Shown here piece after piece: positions 12,620-47,748 of a stretch of 64,000 bases of DNA (the first letter of the stretch is position 1; every line of letters begins with the position of its first letter). Position numbers and translations under genes: made by a program. A model generated the notes under the pieces. It was not told the DNA's origin and ran no database searches. It worked only from the letters and a program-made list of their open reading frames with translations. The stretch is from Isurus oxyrinchus (Eukaryota). The stretch lies in NCBI GenBank assembly GCA_026770705.1, contig JANJGN010002606.1, forward strand, positions 1 through 64,000. Direction: 5' to 3'.

Positions 12620-15600
12620 TGATACAGGGATTAGATTCATACAGACTGGGACAGGATCTGAGGCAGTGATTACTGATACAGAGACTAGATCAAAATAAAA
12701 TGACACTGTGTCCAGGGCAGTGATTACTGATACAGGGTCTTGACTAATACAAACTGAGACAGGGCCTAGTGCAATGATTACCGATATAGGGTCCAGTTTA
12801 ATATGAACTGAGAACTGAGACAGAGTATATTGTAGAGCTTACTGATGCATGGTGTGGACTACTATAAACTGAGTCTGGGTCTAGTGCAGAGAAATATGAT
12901 GCAGGGCCGATGTCAACATTAACTGAGACAGGGTCCACTGCAATGGTTACTGATACCTGTGCCTTTATTAATATAAACTGAGAAGGTGTCCAGTGCAGTG
13001 ATTAGTGACACAGGGTCTAGGTTAATATAAACTGAGTCAGGGCCTAGTGCAGTGATTACAGATATAGGGTTTAGAATGATATAAACTGCAAGATGGCATT
13101 GTGCAGTGATTACTGATACAGCGTCTGGATTAATATAAACTGAGACGGGGTCTAGTGCAGTGATTACTGAAACAGGGTCTAGATTAATAGAAAATGATAC
13201 AGGGGCAACTGCAGTGATTACTGATTTGGGCTCTAGGTTAAGATAAACAGAGACAGGGCCTAGGGCAGTGATTCCTGATACAGGGCCTTCACTAATATAA
13301 ACTGAGACAGGTTCTATTGCAGAGACAACTGATACAGGGTCTAGAAAAACATTAACACTAGACAGGGTCTAGTGCAGTGATTACCGATACAGCGTCTTTA
13401 TTAATATAAAATGAAAGAGGGTCTGCTGCAGTGATTAATGATACAGAGTCTAGCTTGAATTAAACTGAGGCAGGCCATTGTGCACTGATTACTGACACAG
13501 TATCTCGATTAATATAAAGTGATGCAGGGCCAAGCACAGCGATTACCAATACAGCGTCTCAATTTATATAAACTGAGGCAGGCCATTGTGCAATGATTCC
13601 TGACACAGGATCTTGATTAATATAAAGTGATGCAGGGCCAAGCACAGCGATTACCGATACAGGGTCTCGATTGATATAAACTGAGGCAGAGCATGGTGCA
13701 GTGATTACTAATACAGGGGCTAGATCAATATAAATTGAGATAGTGTCTTGTGCAGTGATTACTTATACAGGGCCCAGATAAATATAAGCCAGGGCAGGGG
13801 CTAGTGCAGTGATTACTGATGCAGGTTCTTGACTAATACAAACTGAGGCAGGGCCTAGTGCAGTGATTACCGATAAAGGGTCTAGGTTAATATGAACTGA
13901 TAATTGAGATAGAGTATATTGCAGAGCTTACTGATGCATGGTGTGGACTACTATAAACTGAGTCTGGGTCTAGTGCAGAGAAATATGATGCAGGGCCGAT
14001 GTCAGCATTAACTGAGACAGGGTCCAGTGCAATGGTTACTGTTACTGTTCCTTGATTAATATAAACTGAGAAGGTGTCCAGCACAGTGATTAGTGGCACA
14101 TGGTCTAGGTTAATATAAACTGAGTCAGGGCCTAGTGCAGTGATTACAGATATAGGGTTTAGATTGATATAAACTGCAGGATGGCATTGTGCAGTAAATT
14201 CTGAAACAGGGTCTGGATTAACATAAACTGAGATGGAGTCTAGTGCAGTGATTACTGATACAGGCTCTAGGTTAAGATAAACAGGGACAGGGCCTAGGGC
14301 AGTGATTCCTGATACAGGGCCTTCACTAATATAAACTGAGACAAGTTCTATTGCAGAGATAACTGATACAGGGTCTAGAACAACATTAACTGAGACAGGG
14401 TCTAGTGCAGTGATTACTGATACAGTCTAAATTAAGATAATCTGAGACAGGGCCTAGAGCAGTGATTAATTATACAGGTTCTTAACTAACATAAAATGAA
14501 AGAGGGTCTCCTGCAGTGACTAAGGATACAGGGTCTAGTTTGAAATAAACTGAGGCAGGCCATTGTGCAGTGATTACTGACACAGGATCTCGATTAATAT
14601 AAACTGATGCAGGGCCAAGCACAATGATTACCAATACAGGGTCTCAATTGATATAACTTGAGGCAGGGCATGGTGCAGTGATTACTGATACAGAGTCTAG
14701 ATTAATAGAAACTGAGGCACAGCCAAATGCAGTGACTACTGATAAAGGGTCTAGATTTATTTAAACTGGGGCAGGGCATAGCCCAGTGAATACTGATACA
14801 GGGATGAGATTAATACAAACTGAGACAGGATCTGGGGCAGTGATTACTGATACAGGGACTAGATCAAAATAATCTGACACCATATCCAGGGCAGTGATTA
14901 CTGATAAACGGGCCTGAACTAATGTAAACTGAGACAGGGCCAAGTGCAGTGATTACTGATACAGGGCCTTGACTAATACAAACTGAGACAGGTCCTAGCG
15001 CAGTGATTACCGATACAGGGCCTAGATTAATATGAACTGAGAACTAAGATAGAGTATATTGCAGAGATTACTGATGCATGATGTGAACTGCTATAAACTG
15101 AGTCTGGGTCTAGTGCAGAGAAATATGATGCAGGGCCGACATGAACATTAACTGAGACAGGGCCTAGTGCAGTGATTACTGATACCAGTCTAGATTAATA
15201 TAAACTGAGACAGGGCCTAGAGCAGTGATTAATTACACAGGGTCTTGATTAATATAAAATGAAAGCGGGTCTTCTGCAGTGATTACTGACACAGGATCTA
15301 GATCAATATAAACTGTGACTGTGTCCATTGCAGTGATTATTGATACAGAGTCTCGATCAATGCAAGCTGATACACTGTCTATTCCAGTGATTACTGACAC
15401 ATAACCTTGGTTAATGGAAACTGAGACAGGTTCCAGTGCCGTATTTACTGATACAGGATCTAGACTAATTTAAACTGAGACAGGCTCGAGTTCAGAGATA
15501 ACTGATATAGGGTCTAGATCAATATTAGCGGAGACAGGACCTACTGCACTGATTACTTATCCAGTGCCTAGGTTAATATGAACTGAGATAGGGCCTAGTG

Positions 15601-16620
15601 CAGTGATTACTAATACAAGGTCTAGATTGATAAATACTGAGGTAGAGCATAGTGCAGTGATTACTGATAGAGTCTAGATTAATAGAAACTGAAAGAGGAC
15701 CAAGTGCAGTGATTACTGATACAAGGTCTTGAGATATTAACTGAGACAAGGTCTAGTTCAGTGATTACTGATACAGGCTACAGATTAAAAGAAACTGAGG
15801 CAGGGCCTAGTGTAGTGATTACTGACACAGGATATAGATTAATACAATCTGATACAGGGCCAAATGCAGCGATTACCGGGTCTGGAGTAATAGAAACTGC
15901 AGCAGGGCATTGTACAGTGATTACTGATACAGGGTCTAGATTAATAGAAATTGAGACAAGGTCCAGTGCTGTGTTTACTGATACATGGTCCTGATCAATA
16001 TAAACTCAGACAATGACCAGTGCAGTGATGACTGATACAGGGTCTAAATTGATATAAACTGAGGCAGTACATTGCACAGTGATTACTGATACAAGTCTAG
16101 GTTAGTATAATCTGGACAGGCTCTAGTGCAGTGATTACTGATACAGGATCTTCATTAATATAAACTGAGACAGGCTCTACTGCAGTGATTACTGATATAA
16201 GGTCTAAATTGATATAGACTGTGACAGGGTCTAGTATAGCGATTACTGATATAGGGCCAAGATTAATATAAACTGAGACAGGATCTAGTGAGTTATTACT
16301 GACAAAGGGACTATATTAATGTTTAATGAGAAAGGGTCTAATGCACTGATTACTAATGCAGCATCTAGATTTTTATAAGCTGTGACAGGATCCAATGCAG
16401 TTATTACTGACATAGGGTTTAGATTGATATAAACTGAGGCAGTGCATAGTGCAGTGATTACTGATACAAGGTCTAGATTAATAGAAACTGAGACAGGGCC
16501 AAGTGCATTGATTACTGATACAGGCTCTAGGTTAAGATAAACTGAGACAGGGTGTGGTGCAGTGATTACTGATGAATGATCTGGACTAACAAAGTGAGAC
16601 AGGGCCAAGTGCAAGAATTA
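12620..16620. repeat. Satellite array, ~54-bp unit made of two diverged 27-bp subunits
   Basis: Consensus agtgcagtgattactgatacagggtct + agattaatataaactgagacagggtct, about 70-75 units. Confidence 0.95.
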
Positions 16621-18305: not shown

Positions 18306-18860
18306 GCCCGGTGTCAATATTGCACTCGACCATGACCCTGCCCGTGTTAATCTTACAATAGACCCTGTCTGTGTTTGCATTACACTAGGCCCTGTCTCAG
18401 TTTATATTACGATCGCCATATCTCTGTTCATACAGCACGTGACGCTGACTCTCTTTATACTACACTGGATTCTGTCTGTTTGTATTTCACTAGGCCCTGT
18501 CCCTGTTTATATCACACTCAAATATTTCTGTTTATATTATACTCGGCATGTCTCTGTTTATACTGCATTAGACGCTGTTCTTGTTTATATTAAACTAGAC
18601 CTGGTCTGTGTTTATAATACACTAGACGCTACCTCTGTTTATATTACATTGGACCCTGCTTCTGTTTATATTACTCTAGATCCTGTCTTTGCTTCTGTTA
18701 AACAAGGCCTTGTCTCTTTATATTACACTTGACATGTCTCTGTATACATTTATCTAGACCTGGCTCTGTATTGAAATAGGCGTTGCCTCAGTTCTGCGCT
18801 ACATCATGCTTGCATTTAAATTCCATTAGACCGGCCTCAGTTATTACTGCACTGCACAAC
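18305..18860. repeat. 27-bp minisatellite (ctagaccctgtctctgtttatattaca), opposite orientation to the 12.6-16.6 kb array
   Basis: Visible 27-nt period; translates as YITLDPVSV-like 9-mers. Confidence 0.85.
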
Positions 18861-22886: not shown

Positions 22887-23174
22887 GGCATAGTCTAGTG
22901 CTGTAGCTACAATGACCAGGTCTGGTACAATATACACATTGTCAAGATCGAACATAATATAAACAGAGACAGGGTCTATTTTAATATAAACGGAGACAGG
23001 GCCTAATGTAACATAAGTGGAGACAGGGTCCAGAGCAATGCAAACTGAGATGGCTTCCATTGGAACATTAAGGAGATAGGGTCTATTTTAATACACACAC
23101 AGGCCTGATCCAGCATAATAGAAATAAAACAGTTCCCAGGACATTAATAATCGAACCAGGATCCTGTATAACAT

Positions 23175-29613: not shown

Positions 29614-29741
29614 GTGAGTAGTTTTTATTGTCCAAGTCTCTTACTGTCACTGTCTCAGTGTTAGTCTCTCTCTGGAATATTACAGAGTCAGGAATCATTT
29701 CACCAGGGTTAACCCTCGGGGTTTTTGATATATTTGTACAG

Positions 29742-30046
29742 GTGTCCAGTCGGAGATTGTGTTGACTCAGCCAGAGGCAGAGACCGGGCGCCCCGGAGGC
29801 TCCCTGAGACTGACCTGTGAAACCAGCGGCTTCGATCTTGGCAACTACTGGATGCAGTGGATCCGACAGGTTCCTGGACATGGGCTGGAGTGGCTGGTTA
29901 GCTACTATAGTTCATCCAACAACGGCTACGCCCCAGCAATTAAGAATCGATTTACTGCGTCCAAAGACACTTCAAGGAGCATCTTCTCCTTGGACATGAC
30001 GAGCCTGAAGACTGAAGACACCGCCATCTATTACTGTGCAGCAGAC
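29742..30046 (+). CDS. IGHV: Germline VH segment
   Basis: (R)[10 protein letters not shown]...LTC...WIRQ...GLEWL...[10 protein letters not shown]; open frame with an AG acceptor ending at 29741. Confidence 0.97.
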
Positions 30047-30453: not shown

Positions 30454-30533
30454 AGTTTTTGTGCGGGTGTATTTCACTGTGATACTACAGCGGGTCACAG
30501 TGCTGTGCACAGCGACATCCTCATACAAAAACC
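30454..30533 (+). other. DH1 segment (30482-30495 ATACTACAGCGGGT) with 12-bp and 22-bp RSS
   Basis: AGTTTTTGT-12-CACTGTG / D / CACAGTG-22-ACAAAAACC. Confidence 0.95.
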
Positions 30534-30831: not shown

Positions 30832-30900
30832 AGTATTTGACATGGTGTGTCTCACTGTGATATACTGGATGGCACAGCAGTTACTGTCAATACAAAAACC
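30832..30900 (+). other. DH2 segment (30860-30872 ATATACTGGATGG) with 12/12 RSS
   Basis: AGTATTTGA-12-CACTGTG / D / CACAGCA-12-ACAAAAACC. Confidence 0.93.
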
Positions 30901-31269: not shown

Positions 31270-31317
31270 ACGGTATGGGCTACTGGGGACAAGGGACCAT
31301 GGTGACGGTGACTGCAG
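31270..31317 (+). CDS. IGHJ: JH segment (GMGYWGQGTMVTVTA)
   Basis: WGxG motif; GTAAGA donor at 31318, phase 1. Confidence 0.97.
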
Positions 31318-34254
31318 GTAAGAACCATGCACTTATTTAGTAACTGTTTTATTTGAGTCTTTGCTTTACGTTTTTGTCTATTTTAATAATTCATTCCTTC
31401 ACTGAAGCATGGGTTTGGTGGATTCTGTATTCAGATTTGTTTTACAATGCTTCATGCGATTCCGCTATGTCTTGACAAAAAAAGTACTGCTGAGGGATTC
31501 GTCCCTGGTCGTTGTGATTTGGTGTTTATCTACTGAGGATAATGTGTGGCCGGGTTACTTGAAATATCTAACGTTTGTTAAAACAGTTTGACGTTTCTGC
31601 AGTGTTTAATCTCGGTGACATCTAATGGCTGCAGGTTTTACCATCTGTTGCACAAGGGTTTAAATATGTCTGAAATCAAGCCCAATATGAACAAAATGTG
31701 CTTGAGTTTCAATGTTAATTTATTGAACATGTTCCGCCTACTCACAATGCTGGTGCCATTATTCCATATTTCTGTTTAGTTTAATTATTCATTCATTTGG
31801 TGACGAGCGGGTTGTCTGGATTCGATATTGAGATTTTCTTGCAATGTGACATTGGATTCTGTTGGAATTGTTTATTGAATTGAGTTGCTTCTCCATGAAA
31901 CGGGTTTCAGCCCCAGTGATGTGATTTGGTGTTTTTCTGCTGAGGAGATTGTGTGTCTGGGTGGCTTTGAACAAGTGGAATTTGTGAAACGGTTTGGCGG
32001 TTCTGCATTGTTTCTGCTTTGTTTAAACTCGGTGATATTGAGCGGTTACACGTTTTGTGGTTGAATGGAAACAGTCTACGCGTTTGTATCTGCTTGAAGC
32101 GCGATTGTAGGCAGAAATTGGGAAAAAGCGTTTAAAGATGCGTTAGAACATTTTGTTTTTATTTTAAGTGATAATTGCAGATTAAGCTAAACCATGGATA
32201 ATGACGCTCATTCAGAACATAACTCGGTACTGCAATCAGAAACTATATAATTAACAAGTTTTCAAATTGTAAAGTAAAATTAATATAATTCAAACAATTA
32301 TAATATGGTAATATTTCTCCATATTGACGGAACAACTTTCATATTAACATAATTGATCATTAATCGTCTTTCACAATTCTGCTGGCACTGCGCACTATTA
32401 AGATGATAGGAAAAGTTTTTAGGCTGGAAACATTTTGTGATTATGTATAAAAAAATCAATAAGAATATACTGACTCTACAGAATTGTTCAGATTCACAAG
32501 AGATTTTGAATTACTTTTTTAGATCCCTGATAACCTTTATCTTAAAATCTTAAAACCTTATCTTAAAGACTTAAAGAGGAGTTTGACATTGCAGTTTGGC
32601 AATATGTGTATCCGTTTATTACATTCTTTCTGTGCAACCAGAGCCGCATTATTCCTTCAATGTCATTGGGATTTGGATAGCGAGATAATTGTCACTAGTT
32701 TAATCTTAAACAGTTTTCTGGGGGTAGAATTTGCTGGCAGTAAATGAATTGTTCTTACATTTTCTTGAAATGTAGGAAGGTGCAGACTGCATATGAATAG
32801 AGTTTGACAAGTAAAAGCTTGAAATTCGAACAGATTAATTTAATTGCAAACATTAATATTAGTTTGAGCTTAATAACAATACCCTGCCTCCCATAGTTGT
32901 GCTGGAAACAGAATAGAATTATAGGGGAAGAACAGATTATATCTGAGATTCATGCTTAATTCTTATTAAATGTTAAATTGAAGAACAAAATCTCGAATCC
33001 TTTTGCTGGTTATATTTCAGTGGTGCAGATGATCTGAATGAATTGTTCTCATCAAGTTTTATACTGATCAATTTGGATCTTCTTTCAATGAACAACATAT
33101 TTAACCATTAAATTATAGGGATTGTTATCTAGGAAGCACTTTTATTGTTAAGTAACTGCTAGGAACATTTTTTACATATAGCTTGGAATTAAGACAAGTT
33201 TGCTTTAACCAACAGATGGTGTTACAGCCCATCGACAGTTAATGTGATGTGACCCCCGGCCATATTTGAAAATATTTAAAATATTCCACTCATAAAGTCA
33301 TCGTGTGAATTACTCGATGAGAATAGATGGAATTTATGATTTCTCAATGCATTCAGAAACACGCATAGTTTACAATTTTGTACGTTAAAACAAGAGCAGT
33401 GGAAGTAAAAGTAAAATAGTAAATAATGATTAGATTTAAGTAAAATTGATATACTTCTCTGAATGTTACCATCTGGTAATTTCAAGTTTATTGTTCAACA
33501 TTGTTTCAGTGTCAGGTTGATTTAAATAAACCCCAATTATTTCACAAAGTACCAGGGAGAAACAAGTTTTCAATTATTGAAAACCATTTTTAATATTATA
33601 GAGTAGAAATCAGCTAACAAGAAAATGAATTGACAATAACAAGATAATTAACTTACAAGATAATATTAGTGAAAATTAATTCAACATAAATAAACTCCAA
33701 CAATTAAGTAGTCATTATAATGAATGCAAAATCTCAAAGGGTGGAGAGAATTTTTAATTGTATCCAAAATGAATTTAGAAAAGAATACTTCCTTACTCAG
33801 CTGTGCTCAGCTCGAATAGGTGTTTCGCCTTGATGATTTTCTTGATTATATTTATATCTACAATCACATCAAATCAGTGGGTAATCGATTTTCAATGTGA
33901 ATATTTCCTGATTTGTTTAATTCTTACCTTGTCATTGAGTTTCTGTTACGGACATGAAATTACCCTGAATCTGTCATATTTAATGTGCTCATTTTCAGGG
34001 TAACTTAAATCTTACATTGTTTGGAGATTTGAGGCAGACAGGGAGAATTAAATGGAGTTCAAAGGGAGTTTTAAAATGAAAATCAGATTAATTTCAAAGA
34101 AGTTATAGAATAATTGTAGTAAATTGACCATTGATCAATTAGAATCAAACAGCTTGAATAAAATGGACGGATTGAACAGATCTATCTGCTGGGAACTCAC
34201 TTGTTGCATCATTTATGTCTGTTCTGTGCCTGTGCGCGTGGTCACTATGCTGGG

Positions 34255-34725
34255 ACCAGGATTCTGACATATTGACAGTGAAGGAACGGCGATATAATTC
34301 CAAGTCAGAATAGTGGGTGCCTTGGAGGGGAACGTACAGGTGGCAGTGTTTCCAAGCACCTGCTGCCCTTGTCCTTCTAGTTAGCAGAGATTGTGGGTTT
34401 TAAGAGTGCTCCTGAAGGAGCCTTGGCGAGTTGCTGCAGTGCATCTTGTATATGGTACACACTGCTGTCACTGTGTGTCAGTGGGGGAGGGAGTAAATGT
34501 TTAAGGTGGTGGATGGGGTACCAATTCTGTGGGCTGCTTTGTCCCGGATAGTATCGAGTTTCTTGGGGTTTTTTGAAGTTTCACTCATTGAGGCAAGTGG
34601 AAACTATTCAATCCCAGTCCTGACTTGTGCCTTGTAGATGGTCAGTTGTCTTTGGGCAATAGGAGTTGAATTGCTCGCCACAGAATTCCCAGCCTCTGAC
34701 CGGCTCTTGCAGCCACAGCATTTAT
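34255..34725 (-). mobile_element. LINE 3' fragment in the JH-Cmu intron
   Basis: Reverse complement matches 22120-22490. Confidence 0.75.
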
Positions 34726-35479
34726 ATCAAAACTGGATTGAACCCTCTCGTGGGCATATTTGATGGAACAATGTAGAGAGAGTTTTATTTTATGTCAAAC
34801 CAGTGCTGTACCTGACCCGGAGTGTTTGACAGTTCAGTGGAGAATTGGCTTTCTGTTGAATCCCATCCTTGCAGCTGATGACAGGAGTGTACCGGAGGAG
34901 GAGTGGGGGCTTTAATCCATGTCTTAACTTGTCCTGTTCCTGACCTGAGAGCCTTTTCCCTGCAGAGGTCAAACAAACTGAATCAGCATTGAACTACCTG
35001 GCTGTGAGTCCTAGACCAGATCTGTGAAAATAAACAGTTCCATTGCTCAGTTGAAATGACGCACATTAATTGTTTTTAACAATATTTCTGGAGAGAACAT
35101 GTATGCATTTTAAATGAATTAATTATGTTTAAGCATTTTGAGTATCAGAAAATCATTGAATGTGAGTGACCTGAACTTGAGCACAATTTCAGAACAAACA
35201 GAATCAGGGAGTGACAGTGAGTTTCCAGAGAGCAGCACCTGTTCTGATCTGATCAGAGGCTGCGAGTTATTTAAATGATTGAAATGGACAATGACCAGAC
35301 TCCCGCTCCAAATAACCAGTCGTGGGGGATTTGGGGAAAAGAAGCCGCCATCAAAGACTGAGTTATTGAATTGCCGCCTGCAGGGGGAGGAATGAATGAC
35401 AGAAATAAGAGCATGAGGAGGACGTTCGGCCCTTCGATCCTGCCCTCCATTCAGTCAGATCATGGTTCATCTACCTCGA

Positions 35480-35965
35480 CACTCAGTCTCTTTACCACAC
35501 ACCCTCACTCGCTCACTCTGTCTGTCACACACGCTCTCTCTCTCACACACACGTTCACTCTCTCTCTCTCTCTCACGCATTTTCTCTGACAGACACACTG
35601 TCTCTTTCTCTCTCTGTCTCACACACACACACAAACATACTCTCACATTCTCTCTTTCACACACACAAACTCTCTTTAACACGCCCACACTCTGTCTCAC
35701 ACATTGCCTCTCTCTTTCACACACACTCTCAAACATACTATCTCAACTACACACACTCTCACGCATGTGCACACTGTCTCTCCAACACACACATGCACTA
35801 TTTCTCACACATGCACTCTCACACACTCATTCTCTCTCACACACACACACACACTTTCTGTCTCTGTCTCTCTCTCTTTCCCTCTCAAAAACACACATAC
35901 ACTTGCATGCACTCTCTCTCTCTCTCTCTCTTTCTCACGCACACACACACATTCTCACATACATA
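35480..35965. repeat. Degenerate (CT)n/(CA)n microsatellite
   Basis: Direct inspection. Confidence 0.9.
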
Positions 35966-36529
35966 TGTGGGCTGAAAATACTAATTTCAGAATGAAAATC
36001 CGTTAAACTGCAGGCATGTTCATTGTTCCATTTCTGAAGTCCTTTTGTGTAAAATGCAATTACACAGGTGACATCACTATATATGTGGAGAATTTCCAAG
36101 TGTTGAACTAAACACAAAGAAACAAGAAAATGGGAGGGATGTGATGGAGACCACGGCCGCCTTGATCCCCAATACTGGTGCACACTTGGTGCAAGATACC
36201 TGCACGGCCCATCCTGGTTTTGCTGTAACCTTCCCCTCCAGCCCCTCAGTCTGCCTATTCGCACACTGACACGGGTTTCTTAAAGAAAGGCATCAGCATT
36301 AAAGCAGCTGGCCAGTGCTCTACACTGCTGCCTGACTTTACACAGCCGGTGTTACTGAAAGCTGATCAATCTGGAGAATCGGGACAGGGTCGATGGAGAG
36401 GAAGAGGAGGAGGTGGAGCTGGTGGAGCTGAATGGAGGAGCCCCCAGCTCGGCAACAGGCAATGGAAAGCTGAGCCAGAGCAGAAAATCATCTGGAGAAA
36501 CATCACCTTGATGAGCCTGCAGCACCTGG

Positions 36530-37325
36530 GCACCCTCACTACCCACAATCATCACCTTCATTCTCTCACTCATCCTCACTACCCATAATCACTCATCCTC
36601 ACTCAATCTCACTCACTCACCCTCACTCACTCGCCATCACTCATCCTCACTCCCTCACCCACCCTCACTCACTCACCCTCGCTCACTCGCCCTCACTCCC
36701 TCTATCACTCATCCGCCCTCCCTCACCCACCCATGCTCACTCACCCTCACTCACTCACACTCACTCACCCATCACTCACGCACCCTCACTCACTCTCTCT
36801 CACTCACCCTCACTCACCCATTTTCATTCTCACTCAATTACTCACCCTAACTCACTCACTCTCACTCACCCTCACTCACCTTTCCCTACCGAGCCTCATT
36901 CTCACTCAATTACCCACCCTAACTCACTCACACTCACTCACTCTCACTCACCCACAGTCACTCACCCAGCCTCGTTCACAATCATTCACCCACCCTCACT
37001 TATCCACCCTTACTCATCCACGCTCACTCATCCTTACTCAAACTCACTCATTCACCCATCCTTATTCACCTACCTGCACTCACAGTCAATAACTCATCCT
37101 CCCCACCCTCACACACCCAGCAACTCTCACTCACCCACTCATCCACCCTCAGTCAATCACCCACCCTCACTCACTCATCCATTCTTACTCACCCACATTC
37201 AGGCACCCACCCACGCTCACTCATCACTCACCCACGCACCCTCACTCACTCAGCCACCCGCCCTCGCTCTGTCACTCAGCCACCCTCACTTTGTCAACCA
37301 TGCACAGGCTCACTCACTCGATCAC
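36530..37325. repeat. C-rich low-complexity array (ctcactcaccc-like)
   Basis: About 800 bp almost devoid of G on the + strand. Confidence 0.9.
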
Positions 37326-37339
37326 TTTTCCTAAATCGG

Positions 37340-39110
37340 TGTGTGGGAGGGCGGGAACGAGAGACCTGGAAGAGAGGCCTGAGGCCTAGCAGTGCCAGAA
37401 AGTGGAGGATGGCCGAAGGGAGCGATGAGCGTCGGTCGAAAGGGCAGAGAGGCGAGGAGAAAGTGCAGAGAGCCTGGGGGAAAAGGCAGAGAGCCGAGGG
37501 GGTTGGGGTGGAAGGGCAAAGAGCCGGGGGGTTTGGGGGGAAGGGAAGAGAGTCGGGGAAAAGGGCAGGGATCCAGCAAAAAGTGCATAAAGATTGGGCA
37601 AGGGTCAGCGAGCCCGGGAACGGTCAGCGATCCAGTGGAAAAGGTCAGAAAGCCGAGCGAAAGCGCAGAGACCCATGGAGTAAGTGCAGAGAGCTGGGGT
37701 AGAAAGCACAGGGAGGCGGGGGGTGGGGTGCAGTGCAGAGAGGCAGGAGGGGGAAAGGGCAAAGAGGCGGCGGGGGAAAGGGAAACGGTAGAGAGGCGGG
37801 GTGGAGGGCTGAGAGGCGGGGGTGCAGTGCGGAAAGGGCAGTAAAGCGGGGGGCAAAGGGCAGAGAGGCGGGAGGGGGAAAGGGCAGAGAGGCAGGAGGG
37901 GGAAAAGGCAGAGAGGCAGGAGAGGGAAAGGTCAGAGAGGCAGGAAGGAGAAAGGGCAGAGAGGCGGGAGGGGGAAAGGGCAGAGAGGCAGGAGGGGGAA
38001 AAGGCAGAGAGGCAGGAGAGGGAAAGGTCAGAGAGGCAGGAAGGAGAAAGGGCAGAGAGGCAGGAGGGGGAAAGGGCAGAGAGGCAGGAGGGGGAAAGGG
38101 CAGAGAGGCAGGAGGGAAAAAGGACAGAGAGGAGAGGAGGAAAGGGCAGGGAGGCCGGAGGAGGAAAGGGCAGAGAGGCCGGAGGGAAAAAGGGCAGAGA
38201 GGCGGGAGGGGGAAAGGGCAGAGAGGCGGGAGGGGAAATGGGCAGAGAGGCGGGAGGGGAAATGGGCAGAGAGGTGGGAGGGGAAATGGGCAGAGAGGTG
38301 GGAGGGGAAATGGGCAGAGAGGTGGGAGGGGAAATGGGCAGAGAGGCGGGAGGGGAAATGGGCAGAGAGGCGGGAGGGGGAAAGGGCAGAGAGGCGGGAG
38401 GGGAAATGGGCAGAAAGGTGGGAGGGGAAATGGGCAGAGAGGTGGGAGGGGAAATGGGCAGAGAGGCGGGGAGAAAGTGCTGAGAGGCGGGAGGGGGAAA
38501 GGGCAGAGAGGAGAGGAGGAAAGGGCAGAGAGGCGGGAGGGGGCAAAGGGCAGAGAGGTGGGAGGGCGAAGGGCAGAGAGGCGGGAGGGGGAAAGGGCAG
38601 GGAGGCGGGAGGGGAAAAGGGCAGAGAGGCCAGAGGGAAAAAGGGCAGAGAGGCAGAAGGGTGAAAGGGCAGAGAGGCTGGCGAGAAAGGGAAGAGAGGC
38701 GAGGGGTAAAGGGCAATGAGGCAGGAGGGGCAAAGGGCAGAGAAGCGGGAGGGCAAAGGGTAGAAGGGCCAGAGGAGGAAAGGGCAGAGAGACAGGAAGG
38801 GGAAAGGGCAGAGAGGTGGGAGGAGGAAAGGGCAGAGAGGCGGAGGGAGGAAAGGGCAGAGAGGCAGGAGGGGGAAAGGGCAGAGAGGCGGGAGGGGGCA
38901 AGTGCAGAGAGGAGGGTGGGGGTAAAGGGCAGAGAGGCAGGAGGGGGAAAGGGCAGAGAGGCGGGAGGGGGAAAGGGCAGAGAGGCAGAGGGAGGAAAGG
39001 GCAAAGAGGCGGGGGGAAAGGGCAGCGAAGCGGGCAGGGGGGAAGGGCTGAGAGGTGGGGGAATGGGGAAGGGCAGCGAGGTGGGCAAAAGTGCAGAGAG
39101 CCGGAATACA
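37340..39110 (+). repeat. G-rich purine tandem array, 24-bp unit gggcagagaggcgggagggggaaa
   Basis: Regular core at about 37730-39060; appears as GREAGGGK 8-mers in the ORF track. Confidence 0.95.
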
Positions 39111-39589
39111 GTGGGGACATCCGGGCGAAAGCATTTGTGAGCCGAGGCTCCAGGCACCCTGGGCCCCATTCTCTCTCTCTCTCTCTCTCTCTCCCTCATT
39201 GCATCTCCTCCTCCTGAAATCCTTTCCGTTCCTGGGGAAAGGCGATAAGTGCCTAGGAGAGAAAGGAGACAATGTCTCAGTGCGCTCCCCCCCCCACCCC
39301 CTCACCCCGGCCCCACTGGCTTCCTACACCTTCCTCCAGTGGGTGTTCACTGCCCCTCCAATCACAACCTGTTTGTCTCCCACTTTTCCTGCTGATAGGC
39401 CCACTAGTCAGGCTATCAGCAGCTAACGGGGTAGGGGGTGCGCCTGAGATTGGGGGAGCATCTCCTTACAGATATCTTCAACTCCACTTACCTGCCTTAC
39501 TAGCATTTTGAACAACGGCTCCGGGGGCCAGACAGAGGGGCTTCGGGGGCCACAATCCAGTGACAGGACATGGATTGGACAAGCCCATA

Positions 39590-41170
39590 ATAAAGGAAAA
39601 TAAGGAAATGGGCAGAGAAGTTGGCCAAATACTTTGGCCTTAACGAGGTGGTTACTAAAATGGCAGAGGCATTGGTTTTAATTTTCCAAACTTCCCGAGA
39701 TTCTGGAACAGTCTAATCAGGTTGGAAAATAGAGAATGAGGCTTTCTCTTAAATAAAGGAGGGAAAGGGAAAGCAAGAAACTACAGGCCAGTTAGCTTAA
39801 CATCTGTCAGAGCGAAAATGTTTTAATCTTTTCTTAAGGAGTATATCACGGGTCACCAAGAAAATCCGAATGCAAATATGGAGATCCATCATGGTTTTGT
39901 GAAAGGGAAATCAATCACATTTGGCTGATTTATTTGAGGTCTTTGAAGTAAGAAGGAACATGAATAAAGGAGAACCTGTGGGTGTGCTCTACTTGGACTT
40001 CCAAAAGGCATTTGACAAAGTAGCACATCAAGGTTACTACACAAAATAGTGGTGTTGGCAGTAACATTTCAGCATGGATAGAAGTTTGGTTAGCTAATGG
40101 GAAACAGAATAGGGATAAATTGGTTATTTTAGATTGGCAAGATGTGACAAGTGGAGTTCCACAGGGATCAATGCTGCGGCCTCAACTATTTACAATTTAT
40201 AACAATGACTTGAATTAAAGGACTGAATGAATTTGCTAAATTTGCTGATAACACAAAAATAGATAGTAAAGTAAATGGTGAAGAGAGGTTAAAGATCAGC
40301 AAAGGGATATCGATAGGTTAATTGAGTGGGCAAAAAAATGACAGATGGAGTATAATCTGGGAAAATATAAACTTGTCCACTTTGGCAGGAAGAATACAAA
40401 AGCAGCGTATTATTGAAAGGGAGAGAGATGGCAGAACCCTGAGGTACAGAGGGATGTGGATCCCTTGGTGCATGAATCACAAAAAGTTATAATACAGGAA
40501 CAGCAAGTGATGAGGAAGGCAAAGGGAATGTTGGCATTTATCACAAGGGGAACAGAATATAATGGAAGGATATTTTGCTACTGTTTAACGGGGTGGCGAT
40601 GAGACCTCGTCTGAATTACTGTGTACAGATTTGGTCTCGTTTAAGAAAGGATATAAAAGCATTAGAAGCTGTTCAGAGAATGTTCGTTCAAATGATACTG
40701 GGAGGTGTCGTCAGTTATCTTATGAGGAAAGTTTGGATAGGCTGGGCCTGTAACCATCGGAGTTTAGAAGAATAAGAGCTCATTTTATTCAAACATATAA
40801 AATCCTGAGGGGAATTAACAGGGTGGAAGCTGAAAGGATGTTTCCTCTTGTGAGACAGACTAACGATAGGGAACACGGTTTAAAAATAAGAGGTCTCCCA
40901 TTTCAGACAGAAATGAGGGGATTTTATTTTTTCTTTCAATGACTCGTGAAACTTTGGAACTCTTCCCCAGAGACCGATGGAGGAGGAGTCATTAATATTT
41001 CAAGGCAGAGGTAGAGAGATTCTTCATTGACAAGGGAGTCAAAGGTTAGCCGAGAGGAGGCGGGAATGTAGAGTTCACGCCACAATCGGATCAGCTATGA
41101 TCGGTAGTGAATGGTGGAGGAGGCCCCAGAGGCCGAATGGCCTACTCCTGCTACTGATCCGCACGTTCAC
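39590..41170 (+). mobile_element. CR1 LINE ORF2 RT plus 3' end in the JH-Cmu intron, decayed
   Basis: NYRPVSLTS, YLDFQKAFDKV, SGVPQGS and KFADNT motifs, interrupted by stops. Confidence 0.9.
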
Positions 41171-41730
41171 ATGTACATACGATTGGAAAATATCGTACTA
41201 ACAGTCACTGGTATTCAGTTTAGGGTTCTATGGTCATTATATAGGTACCATTACAAAGGTACTTTCGAAGTGTTATTGCTGTTCTTTGTTTTGGGGGGGA
41301 TGTGGAGAGGGGAGGGGGCATCAGGAAATTTGAACAGAGCCAATTTTCAAAGCTGCAATGATATAAATGATGAGACAAATTCTCTATCACCACGTGCTGT
41401 TGATTGAGAAATAAATGGTGCCAAAATAATGGGGAAGATGCTCTGCTCTTCCATTTTAATCCACTGAAAGGTACGTCATTCAGATAACATCAAAATGTTC
41501 TCTTTTAGTAATGGGATAGAGGCGGAAAAAGAGGTGTGGGTTTCTAAAGAGGGAACCGACAAGTGAGGGTCACCAAATGATGGAAATAATAAATGATCAA
41601 ATGTGGATGTGGGCTTTAGTTGGAATATATTTGGATATGTTTATAGTTCTAGTCTAATGTCGAGTTGTTTGGTTACTTAATGATCACAAATCACAGAGTC
41701 TAACTTGTTCGATCGGCCATTCTTTCCCAG

Positions 41731-42030
41731 CGACACCGTCTTCGCCCACTCTCTACAGCCTGGTCTCCTCCTGTCAGCAACACAACCCCGACGGCTCCGT
41801 CACCTATGGCTGTTTGGCGATGGACTACTCCCCAGAAATCACCAGCCTGACCTGGAAGAAAGATGGGCAGCAGATCACCACTGGATTTAAGACATACCCG
41901 TCAGTGAGAAACCAGAAGGGAACTTTCACCCTGAGCAGCCAGTTAACCATCACCAAGTCAGAGGGAGAATGCAGCAAAATCAAGTGTGAGGTTCGATACA
42001 GCGGCTCAGACAAGAGCATTGAAATGCACT
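41731..42030 (+). CDS. IGHM: IgM CH1 exon
   Basis: (A)[14 protein letters not shown]...YGCLAMDY...WKK...CEVRY; 300 nt, phase 1/1, AG and GT boundaries. Confidence 0.95.
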
Positions 42031-42244
42031 GTAAGTGTTGGGGAACCTGTGAGAAACAGAAAGACTGTGATTGACCTGTATAGAGTCTTGGCTGTAACGC
42101 ATTTATAATACTCTGCATTGTTCTGATCCCTGGAAATTCCAAGTTCGTGTCCATTGACCGCAAAGAGCCTGTTAAAATATAAGAACTTATTGTATCTGTT
42201 ATCAATTTCTTCTGCAAGAAATGGCTAACCTTTGTTTTTTGAAG

Positions 42245-42559
42245 GTCCTCGTCCTGACTTACCTCCAACTGTTCTCCTCACCGTGAGTTCCAGGGATGAA
42301 ATCACAACCAAAAAATTTGCAACCGCCGTCTGTTCAATCATCGATTTCCGTCCGAAGCCAATCACCGTGAAGTGGCTGAAAAATGGACAACCCATGAATT
42401 CAGGAATTGTCACCTCTCCCGCCTTTGAAATGAACGGGAACTTCTCGGCGACCAGTCGGCTGCAAGTCTCCGCTGGGGAATGGTTCAGCGACGCGGTCTA
42501 TACCTGTCAGGTCACTCACCAAGGGGTCACCCAAAGTCGAAACGCCACCAAGTGTGAGG
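42245..42559 (+). CDS. IGHM: IgM CH2 exon
   Basis: PPTVLLT...VCSIIDF...WLKNG...YTCQVTH; 315 nt, phase 1/1. Confidence 0.95.
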
Positions 42560-43183
42560 GTAAGAAATACAAACCGTGGAAGCAATAGATCATTCTGCAC
42601 ACCGGTGTTAATCAAATCAGGAATTTATTGGAGTTAGTAGAAAGCACGAAACAACATCTAATTTACTATCATATAGTTGGTGTTTCATTCCGATGTAAGG
42701 GCTGCATTCGGATTATTCACCATTCAGGATTTGATCACATCACGTCTCTGCACTGACGTCATAGAGTGTGTGAGGTGGACTTGATATCAGCTTTACCTTG
42801 AGTCAGCAGATCATATTTGGAGAGGCAGAAGGTGTCTGGAACCCTTCACTGGTAACAGCTTCGAGACAGAGTGTTGGAAAGTGCACCCACCCTTTTTATA
42901 AAACATATTTCAGTCCTGCATTCCAGGGCCCAGGAATGATACATTTGTATTGGGACTGGGGCAACGCAGATTTATGAGAATGTTACCGGGGCTGAACGAC
43001 TTAAATTATGAGAACAATTTACACAGACCAAGCTGGTTTTCCATTGTGTAAAGAAGATTAAAAACGATAGTTAGAGGTTGATATGTCCAAGGTGATTTAT
43101 TCTCCTTCAGGGAGTGAAGACTGAATACTGCTGTCCTGCTTCTGAAGGTGAAACTTTGGTTGATTTTCATTTCTGTCTCACAG

Positions 43184-43495
43184 GTGATCACCAATGCCTC
43201 AACGATCCCACAATTACTCTATTGCCACCTCCAATAGAACAAGTCTTACTGGAGGCGACCGTGACCTTAACCTGCATCGTTTCTAATGCACCTTATGGAG
43301 TCCTCGTGTCCTGGACACAAGAGAAGAAGCCTTTGAAATCAGAGATTGCCGTCCAACCGGGAGAGGATCCCGACAGCATGGTCAGCAACGTAAACATCTC
43401 GACACAAGCCTGGCTGAGTGGGGCTGAGTTCTACTGCGTGGTGAGCCATCAGGATCTGCCGACTCCTTTAAGAAGTTCCATCCACAAGGAACCAG
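43184..43495 (+). CDS. IGHM: IgM CH3 exon
   Basis: [19 protein letters not shown]...[15 protein letters not shown]; 312 nt, phase 1/1. Confidence 0.95.
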
Positions 43496-43879
43496 GTGAG
43501 CGGTGAGATTGAAGCAATAAGTTGTTCAATGTGTCTATTTCCAGTGTAAATGTAAGGATCAATATTTACTATTCAGTGTATTCATGGTCTACTCTGATTA
43601 GCAATTTCGCCAACGAAACGCCCTGGGCCTGTGGACTTTCAGGAGGAAATTGATAAGTAGATGAATGAACAATGAATTGAAGGCTGTGCCATTGGGTTTA
43701 GATGAAGCAAGATGGGAGGAGCCTGGTGCGAAGCTGAAACACCAACATGGACCAGTTGGGCAGAATGGCCTGTTTCTATGCTGTAAACTTTGAGAAACTT
43801 TCTCGTCCAACCCTATAAGTTCTCAAGGAAAAGGATTGTGCCACCTCTGCTCCGAGCTGGAAAGCCGGACAGATCCCAA

Positions 43880-44090
43880 ACTATTTTATTTATTAATTCA
43901 TGGGATGTGGGCGTCGCTGGCTGGGCCAGAGTTATTGCCCATCCCTAATTGCCCTTGACAAGGTGGTGGTGAGCTGCCTTCTTGAACCACTGTAGTCCAT
44001 GTGGTGTAGATACACCCACAGTGCTGTTAGGAAGGGAGTTCCAGAATTTTGATTCAGCTATAGTGAAGGATCGGTGATATATTTCCAAGA
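43880..44090 (-). mobile_element. LINE/SINE 3' tail in the CH3-CH4 intron
   Basis: Same tail as 4685 and 23428. Confidence 0.75.
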
Positions 44091-44209
44091 AGTGGATAAT
44101 GAAAAACCTTAATATTCATCACAAAACACGTTACTCTCACATCTAACCAGTGGTTTCATTGTCTATGAATGTATCCAGTTTATTAACATTTATTGTACAT
44201 TTTCTGCAG

Positions 44210-44601
44210 TTAAAGCCCCGCGGGAACCGTCCGTGTCTGTCCTCCTACCCTCGGCAGAACATGTCTCCGCTCAGGGATTCGTCTCCCTCAGCTGCTTAGT
44301 GACAGGTTTCTCCCCGCGAGAGATTTTCGTCAAGTGGACCGTCAATGACAAGCCGGTGAATCCCGGGAACTACAAGAACACCGAGGTAGTGGCGGAGAAC
44401 GGCAATCGCTCCTTCTTCATGTACAGCCTGTTATCCATTGCAGCGGAGGAGTGGGCCAGCGGAGCTCCTTACTCCTGTGTGGTGGGACATGAAGCGATCC
44501 CCTTGAAGATCATCAACAGAACGGTTGATAAATCCAGCGGTAAACCGAGTTTTGTGAACATTTCCCTTGCACTGATGGACACCGTTAATTCATGTCAATG
44601 A
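44210..44601 (+). CDS. IGHM: IgM CH4 exon plus secretory tailpiece
   Basis: ...[11 protein letters not shown]...[24 protein letters not shown], with an NIS sequon and penultimate Cys. Internal donor G/GTAAAC at 44539/44540 serves the membrane form. Confidence 0.97.
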
Positions 44602-44644: not shown

Positions 44645-45034
44645 GTCCTTTTCTCCAATCGTGATTTAAATACACAGTCGTTTAAGTAATGTTGTTTTCC
44701 AATTTTGCTAATTTTAGACGTGTTTTGTTAAAATCGGATACTCACAGGGCTCAGACCCAAGTCTTGTACACCCAGTGCTCCCAGCTCAGATACACCCTGG
44801 GTTAGAGACAGAGTAAAGCTCATTCATTACAGGATTCTGCAAAATAGCTTCACCAGCTCTCCTCCAGCTGAGGAGAAATCTGACAATTTCTCATTTCCAA
44901 TAAACAAACACAGCACATTTAGATCTCGGTGTTCCTGCTTCTCTTGTCTTCCATCCCTTTAAAATGGATGTCAGCTTTAAGCTTCTGCACCACACCCACG
45001 GGGAACTGAAGTGAGGGTCACGCAGAAATATGTC

Positions 45035-45550
45035 CCAACAATCCCCCATCAGAGAGAGGGGGAAGGGAAATTGTTACCCCATTGCACCTCCACCTCCCCA
45101 ACAGAGAGAGGGGGAGCGGAAATTGCTAACCCACTGTACCCCGACTTCTCCAACAGAGAAAGGGGAGGGGAAATTGTTAACCCAATGTACCCCCACTTCC
45201 CCAGAGAGAGTGGAAGGGGACATTGTTAAACCACTGCACCTTCACTTCCACAACAGCAGGTGGTGGTGGGGGGGAATTGTTTAACCACTGTACCCCCACT
45301 TTCCCAACAGAGAGAGGGGAAGGCAAACTGGTAAACCACTGTACCTCCACTTACCTGAGATAGAAAACTGAAAGGAAAATTTTAAGCCAATTTTATCTCC
45401 ACTTGCTAAACAAAAAGACAAGGAAGGCCATTGGTTAACCCGGTGTGTTTCCACCTTCTCAGCAGAGAGAACCGAAAGGGAAATTGCTTAGACAACCAGA
45501 CAGAGCAAAACTATTAACTCACTGGACCCTCAGTCCCCTAGTAGAGAATC
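45035..45550. repeat. ~52-bp minisatellite
   Basis: agagagagggggaagggaaattgttaacccactgtacccccacttcccaac units at 45051, 45103, 45155 and onward. Confidence 0.8.
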
Positions 45551-47620: not shown

Positions 47621-47748
47621 ATTCCACAGACCGCATCTGGATTGAAGACTCTGAGGATGATAATGGCAACATCTGGACAACTGCTTCCACATTCATCATC
47701 CTGTTCTTCCTGAGCATTTTCTACAGCACTGCCGTCACTCTGGCGAAG
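47621..47748 (+). CDS. IGHM: IgM membrane exon TM1
   Basis: (D)[42 protein letters not shown]: acidic spacer plus the conserved antigen-receptor TM motif, with AG/GT boundaries. Missed by the ORF track. Confidence 0.95.

What the first reader, a model, noticed from the sequence alone, without database searches (positions are those of the whole stretch)
37340..39110. Switch-region-like G-rich tandem array in the shark JH-Cmu intron
Seen: a ~1.8-kb array of 24-bp units (gggcagagaggcgggagggggaaa, about 55-70 copies). It is strongly G/purine-rich on the non-template strand, has several G runs per unit and a GGCA (RGYW AID hotspot) in nearly every unit, and lies ~6 kb 3' of JH and ~2.6 kb 5' of Cmu1. 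Known: tetrapod S regions occupy this position, and mammalian ones have this strand bias and form R-loops and G4. Cartilaginous fish are described as lacking S regions yet can swap VDJ between IgH clusters. Inference: the array could act as a proto-switch or recombination hotspot. Caveats: it has few AGCT palindromes, and a hAT-like terminal sequence at about 39572-39586 suggests it may be an internal minisatellite of a DNA transposon.
Basis: partly seen in the sequence, partly recalled or inferred. Interest (0 to 1): 0.82.

Follow-up and report, generated by a model that had tools for sequence, protein, structure and literature searches.

The report
G-rich repeat in shark IgM intron
About 68 G-rich 24-letter repeats (1.7 kb) sit in the long intron before the first constant exon of a shark IgM gene; they have the strand bias of a mammalian antibody switch region but not its enzyme-target motifs, so this is most likely an inherited minisatellite, at most a passive break-prone zone.

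Summary
A 24-bp tandem array lies 6.0 kb 3' of JH and 2.6 kb 5' of Cmu1 in a germline IgM cluster. TRF puts the core at 37735-39059 (55.5 copies); there are about 68 units over 37340-39110.

The sense strand is 56% G and 89% purine, with 93 G-runs per kb. It is the only G-rich block longer than 250 bp in the 64-kb window.

The array is not inside a transposon: no terminal inverted repeats were found, and its flanks are low-copy while the neighbouring LINE fragment is very high-copy. Contigs of a related species cover both array edges. Up to 12 distinct contigs of the source species cover its 5' edge, so it belongs to the IgM cluster family.

The AID-hotspot argument fails:
- RGYW+WRCY is at background (1.36 per 24 bp against 1.29).
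- WGCW is depleted 8-fold, and AGCT is absent from the core.
- WRC on the displaced strand is depleted 8-fold.

No promoter is known nearby and no RNA contig covers the array.

Verdict: a family-wide G-rich minisatellite with mammalian-type R-loop and G4 composition but without the motif hallmark of switch regions. A dedicated proto-switch role is possible (about 0.2) but untested.

The scan noted the same kind of array before in at least 12 other IgM clusters of this genome. One follow-up (s1-300801) reached the same reading.

The parts
37340..39110 (+). Whole G-rich tandem array (about 68 units), G-rich on the sense (non-template) strand of the IgM gene
   Evidence: G>=40% block 37320-39166 is the only one longer than 250 bp in the window
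37735..39059 (+). Homogenised core: 24-bp period, 55.5 copies. Contains an exact 96-bp higher-order duplicate (37884-37979 repeated at 37980-38075) and an 'AAATGG' unit subfamily (38218-38457)
   Evidence: G 56.2%, purine 88.6%; G4Hunter mean 1.39
37438..37734 (+). Degenerate 5' edge of the array (13-41 bp units that keep GCAGAGAG...AAAG[GT])
   Evidence: covered at about 95% identity by contigs of the related species (records 10 and 27)
36495..37346 (+). C-rich (TCACTCACCC)n low-complexity block directly upstream, with the opposite strand bias
35419..35967 (+). Second C-rich / CT-CA low-complexity block in the intron
39114..39410 (+). Short C-rich block directly downstream of the array
36301..36500 (+). 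Small G-rich patch with 6 AGCT per 200 bp (GGTGGAGCTGGTGGAGCTGAATGGAGGAG), 0.85 kb upstream of the array. Other contigs carry a 34-bp copy-number difference here
   Evidence: joint 36427->36394 in 11 contigs of X1
31318..41730 (+). JH-Cmu1 intron (10,413 bp)
   Evidence: GT donor at 31318, AG acceptor at 41729-41730. A contig of run X15 (RNA by guess) joins the last 30 nt of this JH to Cmu1 at 41728 (table 7)
31270..31317 (+). JH segment, preceded by the heptamer CACTGTG
29741..30046 (+). VH exon (V-set), germline with an RSS. D1 is at 30482-30495 and D2 at 30860-30872, both flanked by heptamers
41731..42031 (+). Cmu1 exon
42245..44601 (+). Cmu2 (42245-42559), Cmu3 (43184-43495), and Cmu4 with secretory tailpiece (44210-44601)
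47621..47748 (+). IgM transmembrane exon 1 (..[24 protein letters not shown]..)
39600..41161 (+). Degenerate LINE RT-like fragment, a very high-copy interspersed repeat. Not part of the array
   Evidence: depth 10-100x that of the array and the Cmu1 exon in all DNA runs. RT-like ORF pieces. Pfam gave no hit on the short pieces
45044..45352 (+). 6 x 51-bp tandem repeat 0.45 kb 3' of Cmu4. Its G-rich half (CAGAGAGAGGGGGAGGGGAAAT) resembles the array unit, in the same orientation

Best explanation
The array is a G-rich, purine-strand-biased minisatellite that forms part of the IgM cluster unit of this shark lineage. It grows and is homogenised by replication slippage and unequal exchange. It was copied along with the cluster as the IgM family expanded, and it is also present in a related species. 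It lies inside the primary transcript with G on the non-template strand, so transcription of a rearranged cluster should make it prone to R-loops, G-quadruplexes and polymerase stalling (inferred from sequence only). It is not a switch region in the tetrapod sense, because it carries no excess of AID target motifs and no known promoter lies close upstream. Most likely it has no dedicated switching function. If it contributes to inter-cluster switching at all, it would do so as a passive fragile zone inside the intron.
For: Minisatellite anatomy: a homogenised core with an exact 96-bp higher-order duplicate and a unit subfamily, and degenerate units at the 5' edge. Base rate: the same 64-kb window holds another kilobase-scale minisatellite (12620-16573, 54 bp x 73) and several smaller ones, and the intron also holds C-rich arrays of opposite bias on both sides of this one. 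Family-wide inheritance: up to 12 distinct contigs of the source species cover position 37650, as many as cover the Cmu1-proximal intron (12-13 at 41192-41325). Contigs of the related species cover 37287-37763 and 38799-39160. AID motifs are not enriched: RGYW+WRCY 1.36 per 24 bp against 1.29 for the window. WGCW is 2.3 against 18.3 per kb, AGCT is 0, top-strand WRC is 6.8 against 53.5 per kb, and bottom-strand cold-spot SYC is 333 per kb. Distance: 6.0 kb from JH, whereas S-mu mutation starts just after the I-mu promoter and accumulates for about 2 kb (PMC2715057; PMC2118391). R-loop and G4 capability: G 56%, 93 G-runs per kb, 75% of 25-nt windows at G4Hunter >=1.2, and 25 of the window's 27 top-strand G4 motifs with loops <=12, against thresholds in PMC4245955.
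Against: A fixed position and orientation in many clusters and in a relative is also what selection would give; the data cannot separate the two. G density and G clustering exceed those shown to drive R-loops and CSR in mouse cells. Shark V-to-C swapping between clusters is documented and its targeting is unexplained (PMC4279169, PMC8201067). AID deaminates both strands in S regions (PMC2118391), so the roughly one TGC per unit on the template strand is a usable target. Other elasmobranch genomes could not be examined.
Confidence: 0.6

Rival explanations
1. Proto-switch region. Transcription through the array forms stable R-loops that stall polymerase, recruit or expose DNA to AID, and produce the breaks used when a VDJ of one cluster is joined to the C exons of another. 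It would be a G-cluster-based, hotspot-poor counterpart of mammalian S regions.
For: S-like position, size, strand bias, G clusters and G density. Present in many paralogous IgM clusters and in a related species, so potential donors and acceptors would share it (unchecked scan notes). G density and clusters alone raise R-loop formation and CSR in mouse cells (PMC4245955). S-mu repeats stall RNA polymerase II (PMC2715057).
Against: WGCW/AGCT hotspots are characteristic of S-mu (PMC2715057) and were held constant in the synthetic switch regions of PMC4245955; from memory they are shared by frog and mammalian S regions. Here they are depleted 8-fold. The cytosines on the displaced strand are almost all in the non-hotspot context GGC (97 of 115). 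The array is 6 kb from JH with no evidence of an I-type promoter. No RNA contig lies on it (weak evidence). No similar array was noted in IgW clusters (blank is not evidence). Reviews state that sharks lack S regions.
Confidence: 0.22
2. Cis-acting transcription or RNA-processing element. It would be an array of GGGAGGG-type (MAZ-like) G-rich pause sites, or of G-run/purine-rich RNA-protein binding sites, that slows elongation or organises chromatin in the long intron, unrelated to recombination.
For: GGGAGGG occurs 22 times in the array against 11 on the same strand in the remaining 62 kb. A related motif (CAGAGAGAGGGGGAGGGGAAAT) forms a second, co-oriented 51-bp repeat 0.45 kb after the Cmu4 stop, in the Cmu4-TM1 interval. 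That MAZ-type G-rich elements pause polymerase II is from memory, not tested here.
Against: No binding, pausing or expression data. The motif match is short and composition-driven. The similarity of the two repeats may simply reflect common descent.
Confidence: 0.1
3. Internal minisatellite of a DNA transposon or MITE.
For: A high-copy interspersed repeat begins about 0.5 kb downstream.
Against: No terminal inverted repeats bracket the array. The flanks 37235-37421 and 39105-39665 have depths like the cluster-specific intron and the Cmu1 exon, 10-100x below the neighbouring repeat. That repeat reads as a LINE RT-like fragment, not a hAT. All 35 copies of the 24-mer in the window lie in this one array.
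Confidence: 0.03

Closest known systems
Mammalian Ig switch regions (S-mu, S-gamma, S-alpha)
   Same: Intronic position 5' of the first CH exon. Kilobase-scale tandem repeats. G-rich non-template strand with clusters of 3-5 G. Predicted R-loop and G4 capability (PMC4245955, PMC2715057, PMC9921937).
   Different: No tandem WGCW/AGCT hotspots (AGCT 0, WGCW 2.3/kb). No excess of RGYW/WRCY. 6 kb from JH with no known I promoter or enhancer just upstream. No evidence of junctions. Each shark cluster has a single C gene.
Xenopus (amphibian) S-mu
   Same: Position upstream of C-mu, and tandem repetition.
   Different: The frog region is AT-rich (PMC9921937) and, from memory, works through dense AGCT motifs rather than R-loops. 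The shark array is the opposite: G-rich and AGCT-free.
Classical GC-rich, strand-asymmetric minisatellites (Jeffreys-type; core GGGCAGGANG, from memory)
   Same: 24-bp unit, about 68 copies, purine/G strand asymmetry, variant-unit blocks and higher-order duplicates, degenerate edges. The unit start GGGCAGAGAG resembles the classical core.
   Different: It sits at a fixed place in a multigene family of antigen-receptor clusters that undergo AID-associated recombination in this same intron.
Shark inter-cluster isotype switching (Zhu et al. 2012, cited in PMC4279169 and PMC8201067)
   Different: Accessible reviews describe it as occurring without switch regions or cryptic promoters. The primary paper was not held, so published junction positions could not be compared with an array of this kind.

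Membership tests
Tetrapod Ig switch region | Lies in the intron immediately 5' of a CH gene's first exon (for S-mu: between JH and Cmu1) | tested here: met
   JH ends at 31317, array at 37340-39110, Cmu1 starts at 41731. The J-Cmu1 splice is seen in a contig of run X15, RNA by guess.
Tetrapod Ig switch region | Kilobase-scale array of short tandem repeats | tested here: met
   TRF period 24, 55.5 copies, 1.3 kb core within a 1.77 kb array.
Tetrapod Ig switch region | Dense overlapping AID hotspots (WGCW, especially AGCT) | tested here: not met
   WGCW 2.3/kb against 18.3/kb for the window. AGCT 0 in the core. RGYW+WRCY at background.
Tetrapod Ig switch region | Mammalian type: G-rich non-template strand with G clusters able to start and extend R-loops | tested here: met
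   At sequence level only: G 56%, 93 G3+ runs per kb, G4Hunter mean 1.39. Actual R-loop formation is not testable here.
Tetrapod Ig switch region | Germline (I-exon) promoter just upstream, and transcription through the repeats | tested here: inconclusive
   The array lies inside the V-promoter-driven primary transcript. No RNA contig lies on 37235-39291, but contigs lose rare and repetitive RNA. The only octamer motif in the intron (39870) lies downstream of the array, inside the LINE fragment.
Tetrapod Ig switch region | Recombination junctions of switched B cells fall within it | not testable with these tools
   Needs B-cell DNA. The primary shark switching papers were not held.
Tetrapod Ig switch region | Present at both donor and acceptor genes | tested here: inconclusive
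   Many paralogous contigs and a related species share the array edges. Unchecked scan notes list 12 or more other IgM clusters. Nothing is known for IgW or IgNAR.
G-rich strand-asymmetric minisatellite | Head-to-tail units of 10-100 bp over 0.5 kb or more | tested here: met
G-rich strand-asymmetric minisatellite | Variant-unit blocks and higher-order duplications, with decayed edges (turnover by slippage or unequal exchange) | tested here: met
   Exact 96-bp duplicate 37884-37979 = 37980-38075, the AAATGG subfamily at 38218-38457, and degenerate units at 37444-37734.
G-rich strand-asymmetric minisatellite | Copy-number variation between copies or alleles | tested here: inconclusive
   Contigs of other copies skip or repeat parts of the array, for example 37696->37947. 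Scan notes give lengths of 1.3-3.4 kb in other clusters (unchecked).
Transposon-internal minisatellite (hAT/MITE) | Terminal inverted repeats flanking the array | tested here: not met
   No convincing inverted pair brackets it.
Transposon-internal minisatellite (hAT/MITE) | Flanks present at high copy number genome-wide | tested here: not met
   Flank depths are similar to the Cmu1 exon bin, while the adjacent LINE bins are 10-100x higher.

The most novel reading that the evidence does not exclude
Shark IgM clusters carry a conserved, R-loop-based but hotspot-poor switch-like region. Inter-cluster switching in cartilaginous fish would then be targeted by G-cluster repeats in the J-C intron. 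That would mean the G-rich, R-loop type of S region is far older than mammals, or arose independently, and that the textbook statement that sharks lack S regions is wrong for at least this lineage.
Probability: 0.2. Interest if true: 0.8.

Novelty: new member of a known kind. Interest (0 to 1): 0.42.

Why it matters
Reviews say that cartilaginous fish swap V regions between IgH clusters without switch regions or cryptic promoters, and how breaks are directed to the J-C intron is unexplained. A family-wide array with mammalian-type G clustering at exactly that place gives a concrete, testable candidate. One could map junctions and mutations against it, test for R-loops, or swap it into a mouse S-region cassette. 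If it proves inert, it is a useful negative control: G richness and position alone, without WGCW motifs, would not make a switch region. As things stand it is an ordinary-looking minisatellite whose link to switching is circumstantial.

Tried and rejected
- Other IgM/IgW loci could not be fetched. Deep cross-species conservation therefore could not be tested.
- Several papers were not held: Zhu et al. 2012, Zhang et al. 2013, Kokubu et al. 1988, Hsu 2016 and Matz et al. 2021. Published junction positions and earlier descriptions of shark J-C introns are unchecked.
- No held paper reports a G-rich array in a shark J-C intron.
- The transposon reading is rejected.
- Canonical G4 motifs with loops of 7 or fewer are few (2 in the array). 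G4 potential rests on a 9-nt loop or on G4Hunter scoring.
- A CTCF-site reading of the unit was considered by eye and dropped because the spacing does not fit. It was not scanned formally.
- A J-like stretch on the minus strand near 36150-36190 has no RSS and is probably chance.
- RNA evidence was uninformative. The run is RNA only by guess, and its contigs cover the Cmu1 exon, a little proximal intron and LINE copies, but not the array.
- Pfam gave nothing on the short LINE-like pieces.
- The search of scan findings by sequence was blank, which means nothing.
- The spliced IgM model was not joined. Exons were searched one by one by reference.

Full report
**What is there**

The window holds one germline (unrearranged) shark-type IgM cluster on the + strand.
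- The VH exon is 29741-30046, with an RSS. D1 is at 30482-30495 and D2 at 30860-30872, each between heptamers.
- JH is 31270-31317, followed by a GT donor.
- Cmu1 is 41731-42031, Cmu2 42245-42559, Cmu3 43184-43495, Cmu4 plus secretory tailpiece 44210-44601, and TM1 47621-47748.
- Pfam gives V-set for VH and C1-set for all four C exons.
- Cmu4 with its tail aligns to the end of human IgM constant mu chains at E about 1e-45.
- A contig of run X15 (RNA by guess) ends at 41728 with a loose end identical to the last 30 nt of this JH. This confirms a JH-Cmu1 splice and a 10,413-bp intron (table 7).
- Exons were searched singly by reference.

TRF reports one array at 37735-39059 with period 24, 55.5 copies and 82% matches. 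Shorter degenerate arrays start at 37438. The 24-mer with up to 3 mismatches occurs 35 times, all on the + strand inside the array, against 0.00 expected.

There is an exact 96-bp higher-order duplicate (37884-37979 repeated at 37980-38075), a block of 'AAATGG' variant units (38218-38457), and decayed 13-41 bp units at the 5' edge. This is the normal anatomy of a minisatellite turning over by slippage and unequal exchange.

The array starts 6,023 bp after JH and ends 2,621 bp before Cmu1.

**Composition**

The core is 56.2% G, 32.4% A, 8.7% C and 2.7% T on the sense strand, with 92.8 G3+ runs per kb against 12.6 for the window. The interval 37320-39166 is the only stretch longer than 250 bp in the 64 kb with at least 40% G per 100 nt.

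G4Hunter averages 1.39, and 75% of 25-nt windows reach 1.2. Strict G4 motifs with loops of 7 or fewer are rare (2). With loops up to 12 the array holds 25 of the window's 27 top-strand motifs.

These values exceed the 35-50% G and G-cluster requirements for R-loop initiation and elongation in engineered mouse switch regions (PMC4245955). R-loop, G4 and polymerase-stalling behaviour on transcription is therefore a fair inference, but nothing here shows it.

The bias is local. C-rich blocks of opposite skew lie directly upstream (36495-37346, and 35419-35967) and directly downstream (39114-39410).

**AID motifs**

It is not an enrichment.
- RGYW+WRCY is 1.36 per 24 bp in the array, 1.29 in the whole window and 1.44 in the V-D-J region.
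- WGCW is 2.3/kb against 18.3/kb, and AGCT is absent from the core.
- WRC on the top strand, the one an R-loop would expose, is 6.8/kb against 53.5/kb. Of the 115 top-strand cytosines, 97 are in GGC context.
- On the bottom strand about 10% of cytosines are in WRC (mostly TGC), and cold-spot SYC reaches 333/kb.

S-mu is described as tandem WGCW motifs plus G clusters (PMC2715057), and amphibian S regions are AT-rich (PMC9921937). The array thus has one of the two mammalian hallmarks. It lacks the WGCW motif hallmark, which by my recollection frog and mammal share.

**Not a transposon part**

No inverted repeats bracket the array. I laid Logan contigs of four runs on 36300-41900.
- The bins 39666-41161 have summed depths 10-100 times those of the array, its immediate flanks and the Cmu1 exon, in all three DNA runs.
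- That stretch reads as pieces of a LINE reverse transcriptase in sense orientation. Pfam found nothing on the short pieces.
- No array bin rises more than marginally above the Cmu1 exon bin, so there is no sign of a genome-wide satellite. The tool warns that contig depth is not a copy number.

**Shared by the cluster family and a relative**

In the source organism's run, 12 distinct contigs cover position 37650 in the array's 5' edge. That is about as many as cover the Cmu1-proximal intron (12-13 at 41192-41325) (table 3).

In a second organism, which holds about a third of the 31-mers of the neighbouring intron, contigs cover 37287-37763 at about 95% identity and 38799-39160 (table 8). Both edges of the array therefore exist there too.

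The scan's own notes (unchecked first-reader notes) list the same kind of array in at least 12 other IgM clusters on other pieces of this genome, with lengths of 1.3-3.4 kb. One follow-up on another cluster (s1-300801) called that copy an ordinary repeat array that lacks the enzyme motifs and a nearby promoter. My independent motif counts on this copy agree.

However, inheritance with a duplicating cluster explains the sharing without any function.

**Distance and transcription**

In mouse, AID-dependent deamination starts about 150 nt after the I-exon start and extends over several kb (PMC2118391). In S-mu it accumulates for about 2 kb (PMC2715057).

Here the array begins 6 kb after JH. No promoter is known in shark J-C introns (PMC4588147). 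The only octamer motif in the intron lies downstream of the array, inside the LINE fragment.

No contig of run X15 lies on 37235-39291. The run is only guessed to be RNA, and contigs drop rare repetitive transcripts, so this says little.

**Literature**

Accessible reviews state that cartilaginous fish lack switch regions, yet can express a V region of one cluster with the C region of another (PMC4279169; PMC8201067; PMC4588147).

No held paper mentions a G-rich array in a shark J-C intron. The primary papers were not held. I therefore cannot say whether such arrays were seen in nurse or horn shark, or where the published junctions fall.

**Verdict**

- Most likely (0.6): a G-rich minisatellite that belongs to the IgM cluster unit, with R-loop-prone composition but no dedicated switching role.
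- Proto-switch reading (0.22): kept alive by position, orientation, G clustering and family-wide presence. Weakened by the lack of WGCW, the hotspot-poor displaced strand and the distance from any known promoter.
- Pause or architecture element (0.1): suggested only by the GGGAGGG-type motif (22 in the array against 11 elsewhere on that strand) and by a related co-oriented 51-bp repeat just 3' of Cmu4.
- Transposon reading: essentially excluded.

**Limits**

All cross-copy evidence comes from one read-laying run on contigs and from unchecked scan notes. The nearest VH proteins found were 76-80% identical (Chiloscyllium, Heterodontus, Scyliorhinus torazame).

Noticed in passing
window 36301-36500: A 160-200 bp G-rich patch (GGTGGAGCTGGTGGAGCTGAATGGAGGAG) has 6 AGCT per 200 bp, the second-highest density in the window. 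It lies 0.85 kb upstream of the big array. Eleven contigs of the source species and five in each run of the relative carry a 34-bp back-step here, which indicates a copy-number difference. Its motif content is more S-like than that of the array itself.
   Followed up: partly
window 45044-45352: A 6 x 51-bp tandem repeat lies 0.45 kb 3' of the Cmu4 stop, in the Cmu4-TM1 interval. Its G-rich half (CAGAGAGAGGGGGAGGGGAAAT) closely resembles the 24-bp unit of the intron array and has the same orientation. Common descent or a shared protein-binding motif are both possible.
   Followed up: partly
window 39600-41161: A degenerate LINE reverse-transcriptase-like fragment in sense orientation lies inside the J-Cmu1 intron. 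It is extremely high-copy in both species and is present in contigs of run X15 (RNA by guess).
   Followed up: partly
window 12620-16573, 18334-18769, 22955-23030: A 4-kb AT-rich minisatellite (54-bp unit with a 27-bp sub-period, about 73 copies) lies 13-17 kb upstream of VH. A partial copy at 18334-18769 has a consensus unit that appears to be its reverse complement, and a further short partial copy lies at 22955-23030. This shows that kilobase minisatellites are common around this cluster.
   Followed up: no
window 35419-35967 and 36495-37346: Long C-rich (TCACTCACCC)n / CT-CA low-complexity blocks in the same intron are G-rich on the antisense strand (GGGTGAGTGA). The intron therefore carries strong skews in both directions.
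   Followed up: partly
window 36150-36190 (minus strand): A weak J-like reading (YWGS..) lies on the minus strand without any RSS. It is probably chance.
   Followed up: partly
window 44781-44980: This is the highest AGCT density in the window (7 per 200 bp), just 3' of the Cmu4 stop. It was not examined.
   Followed up: no
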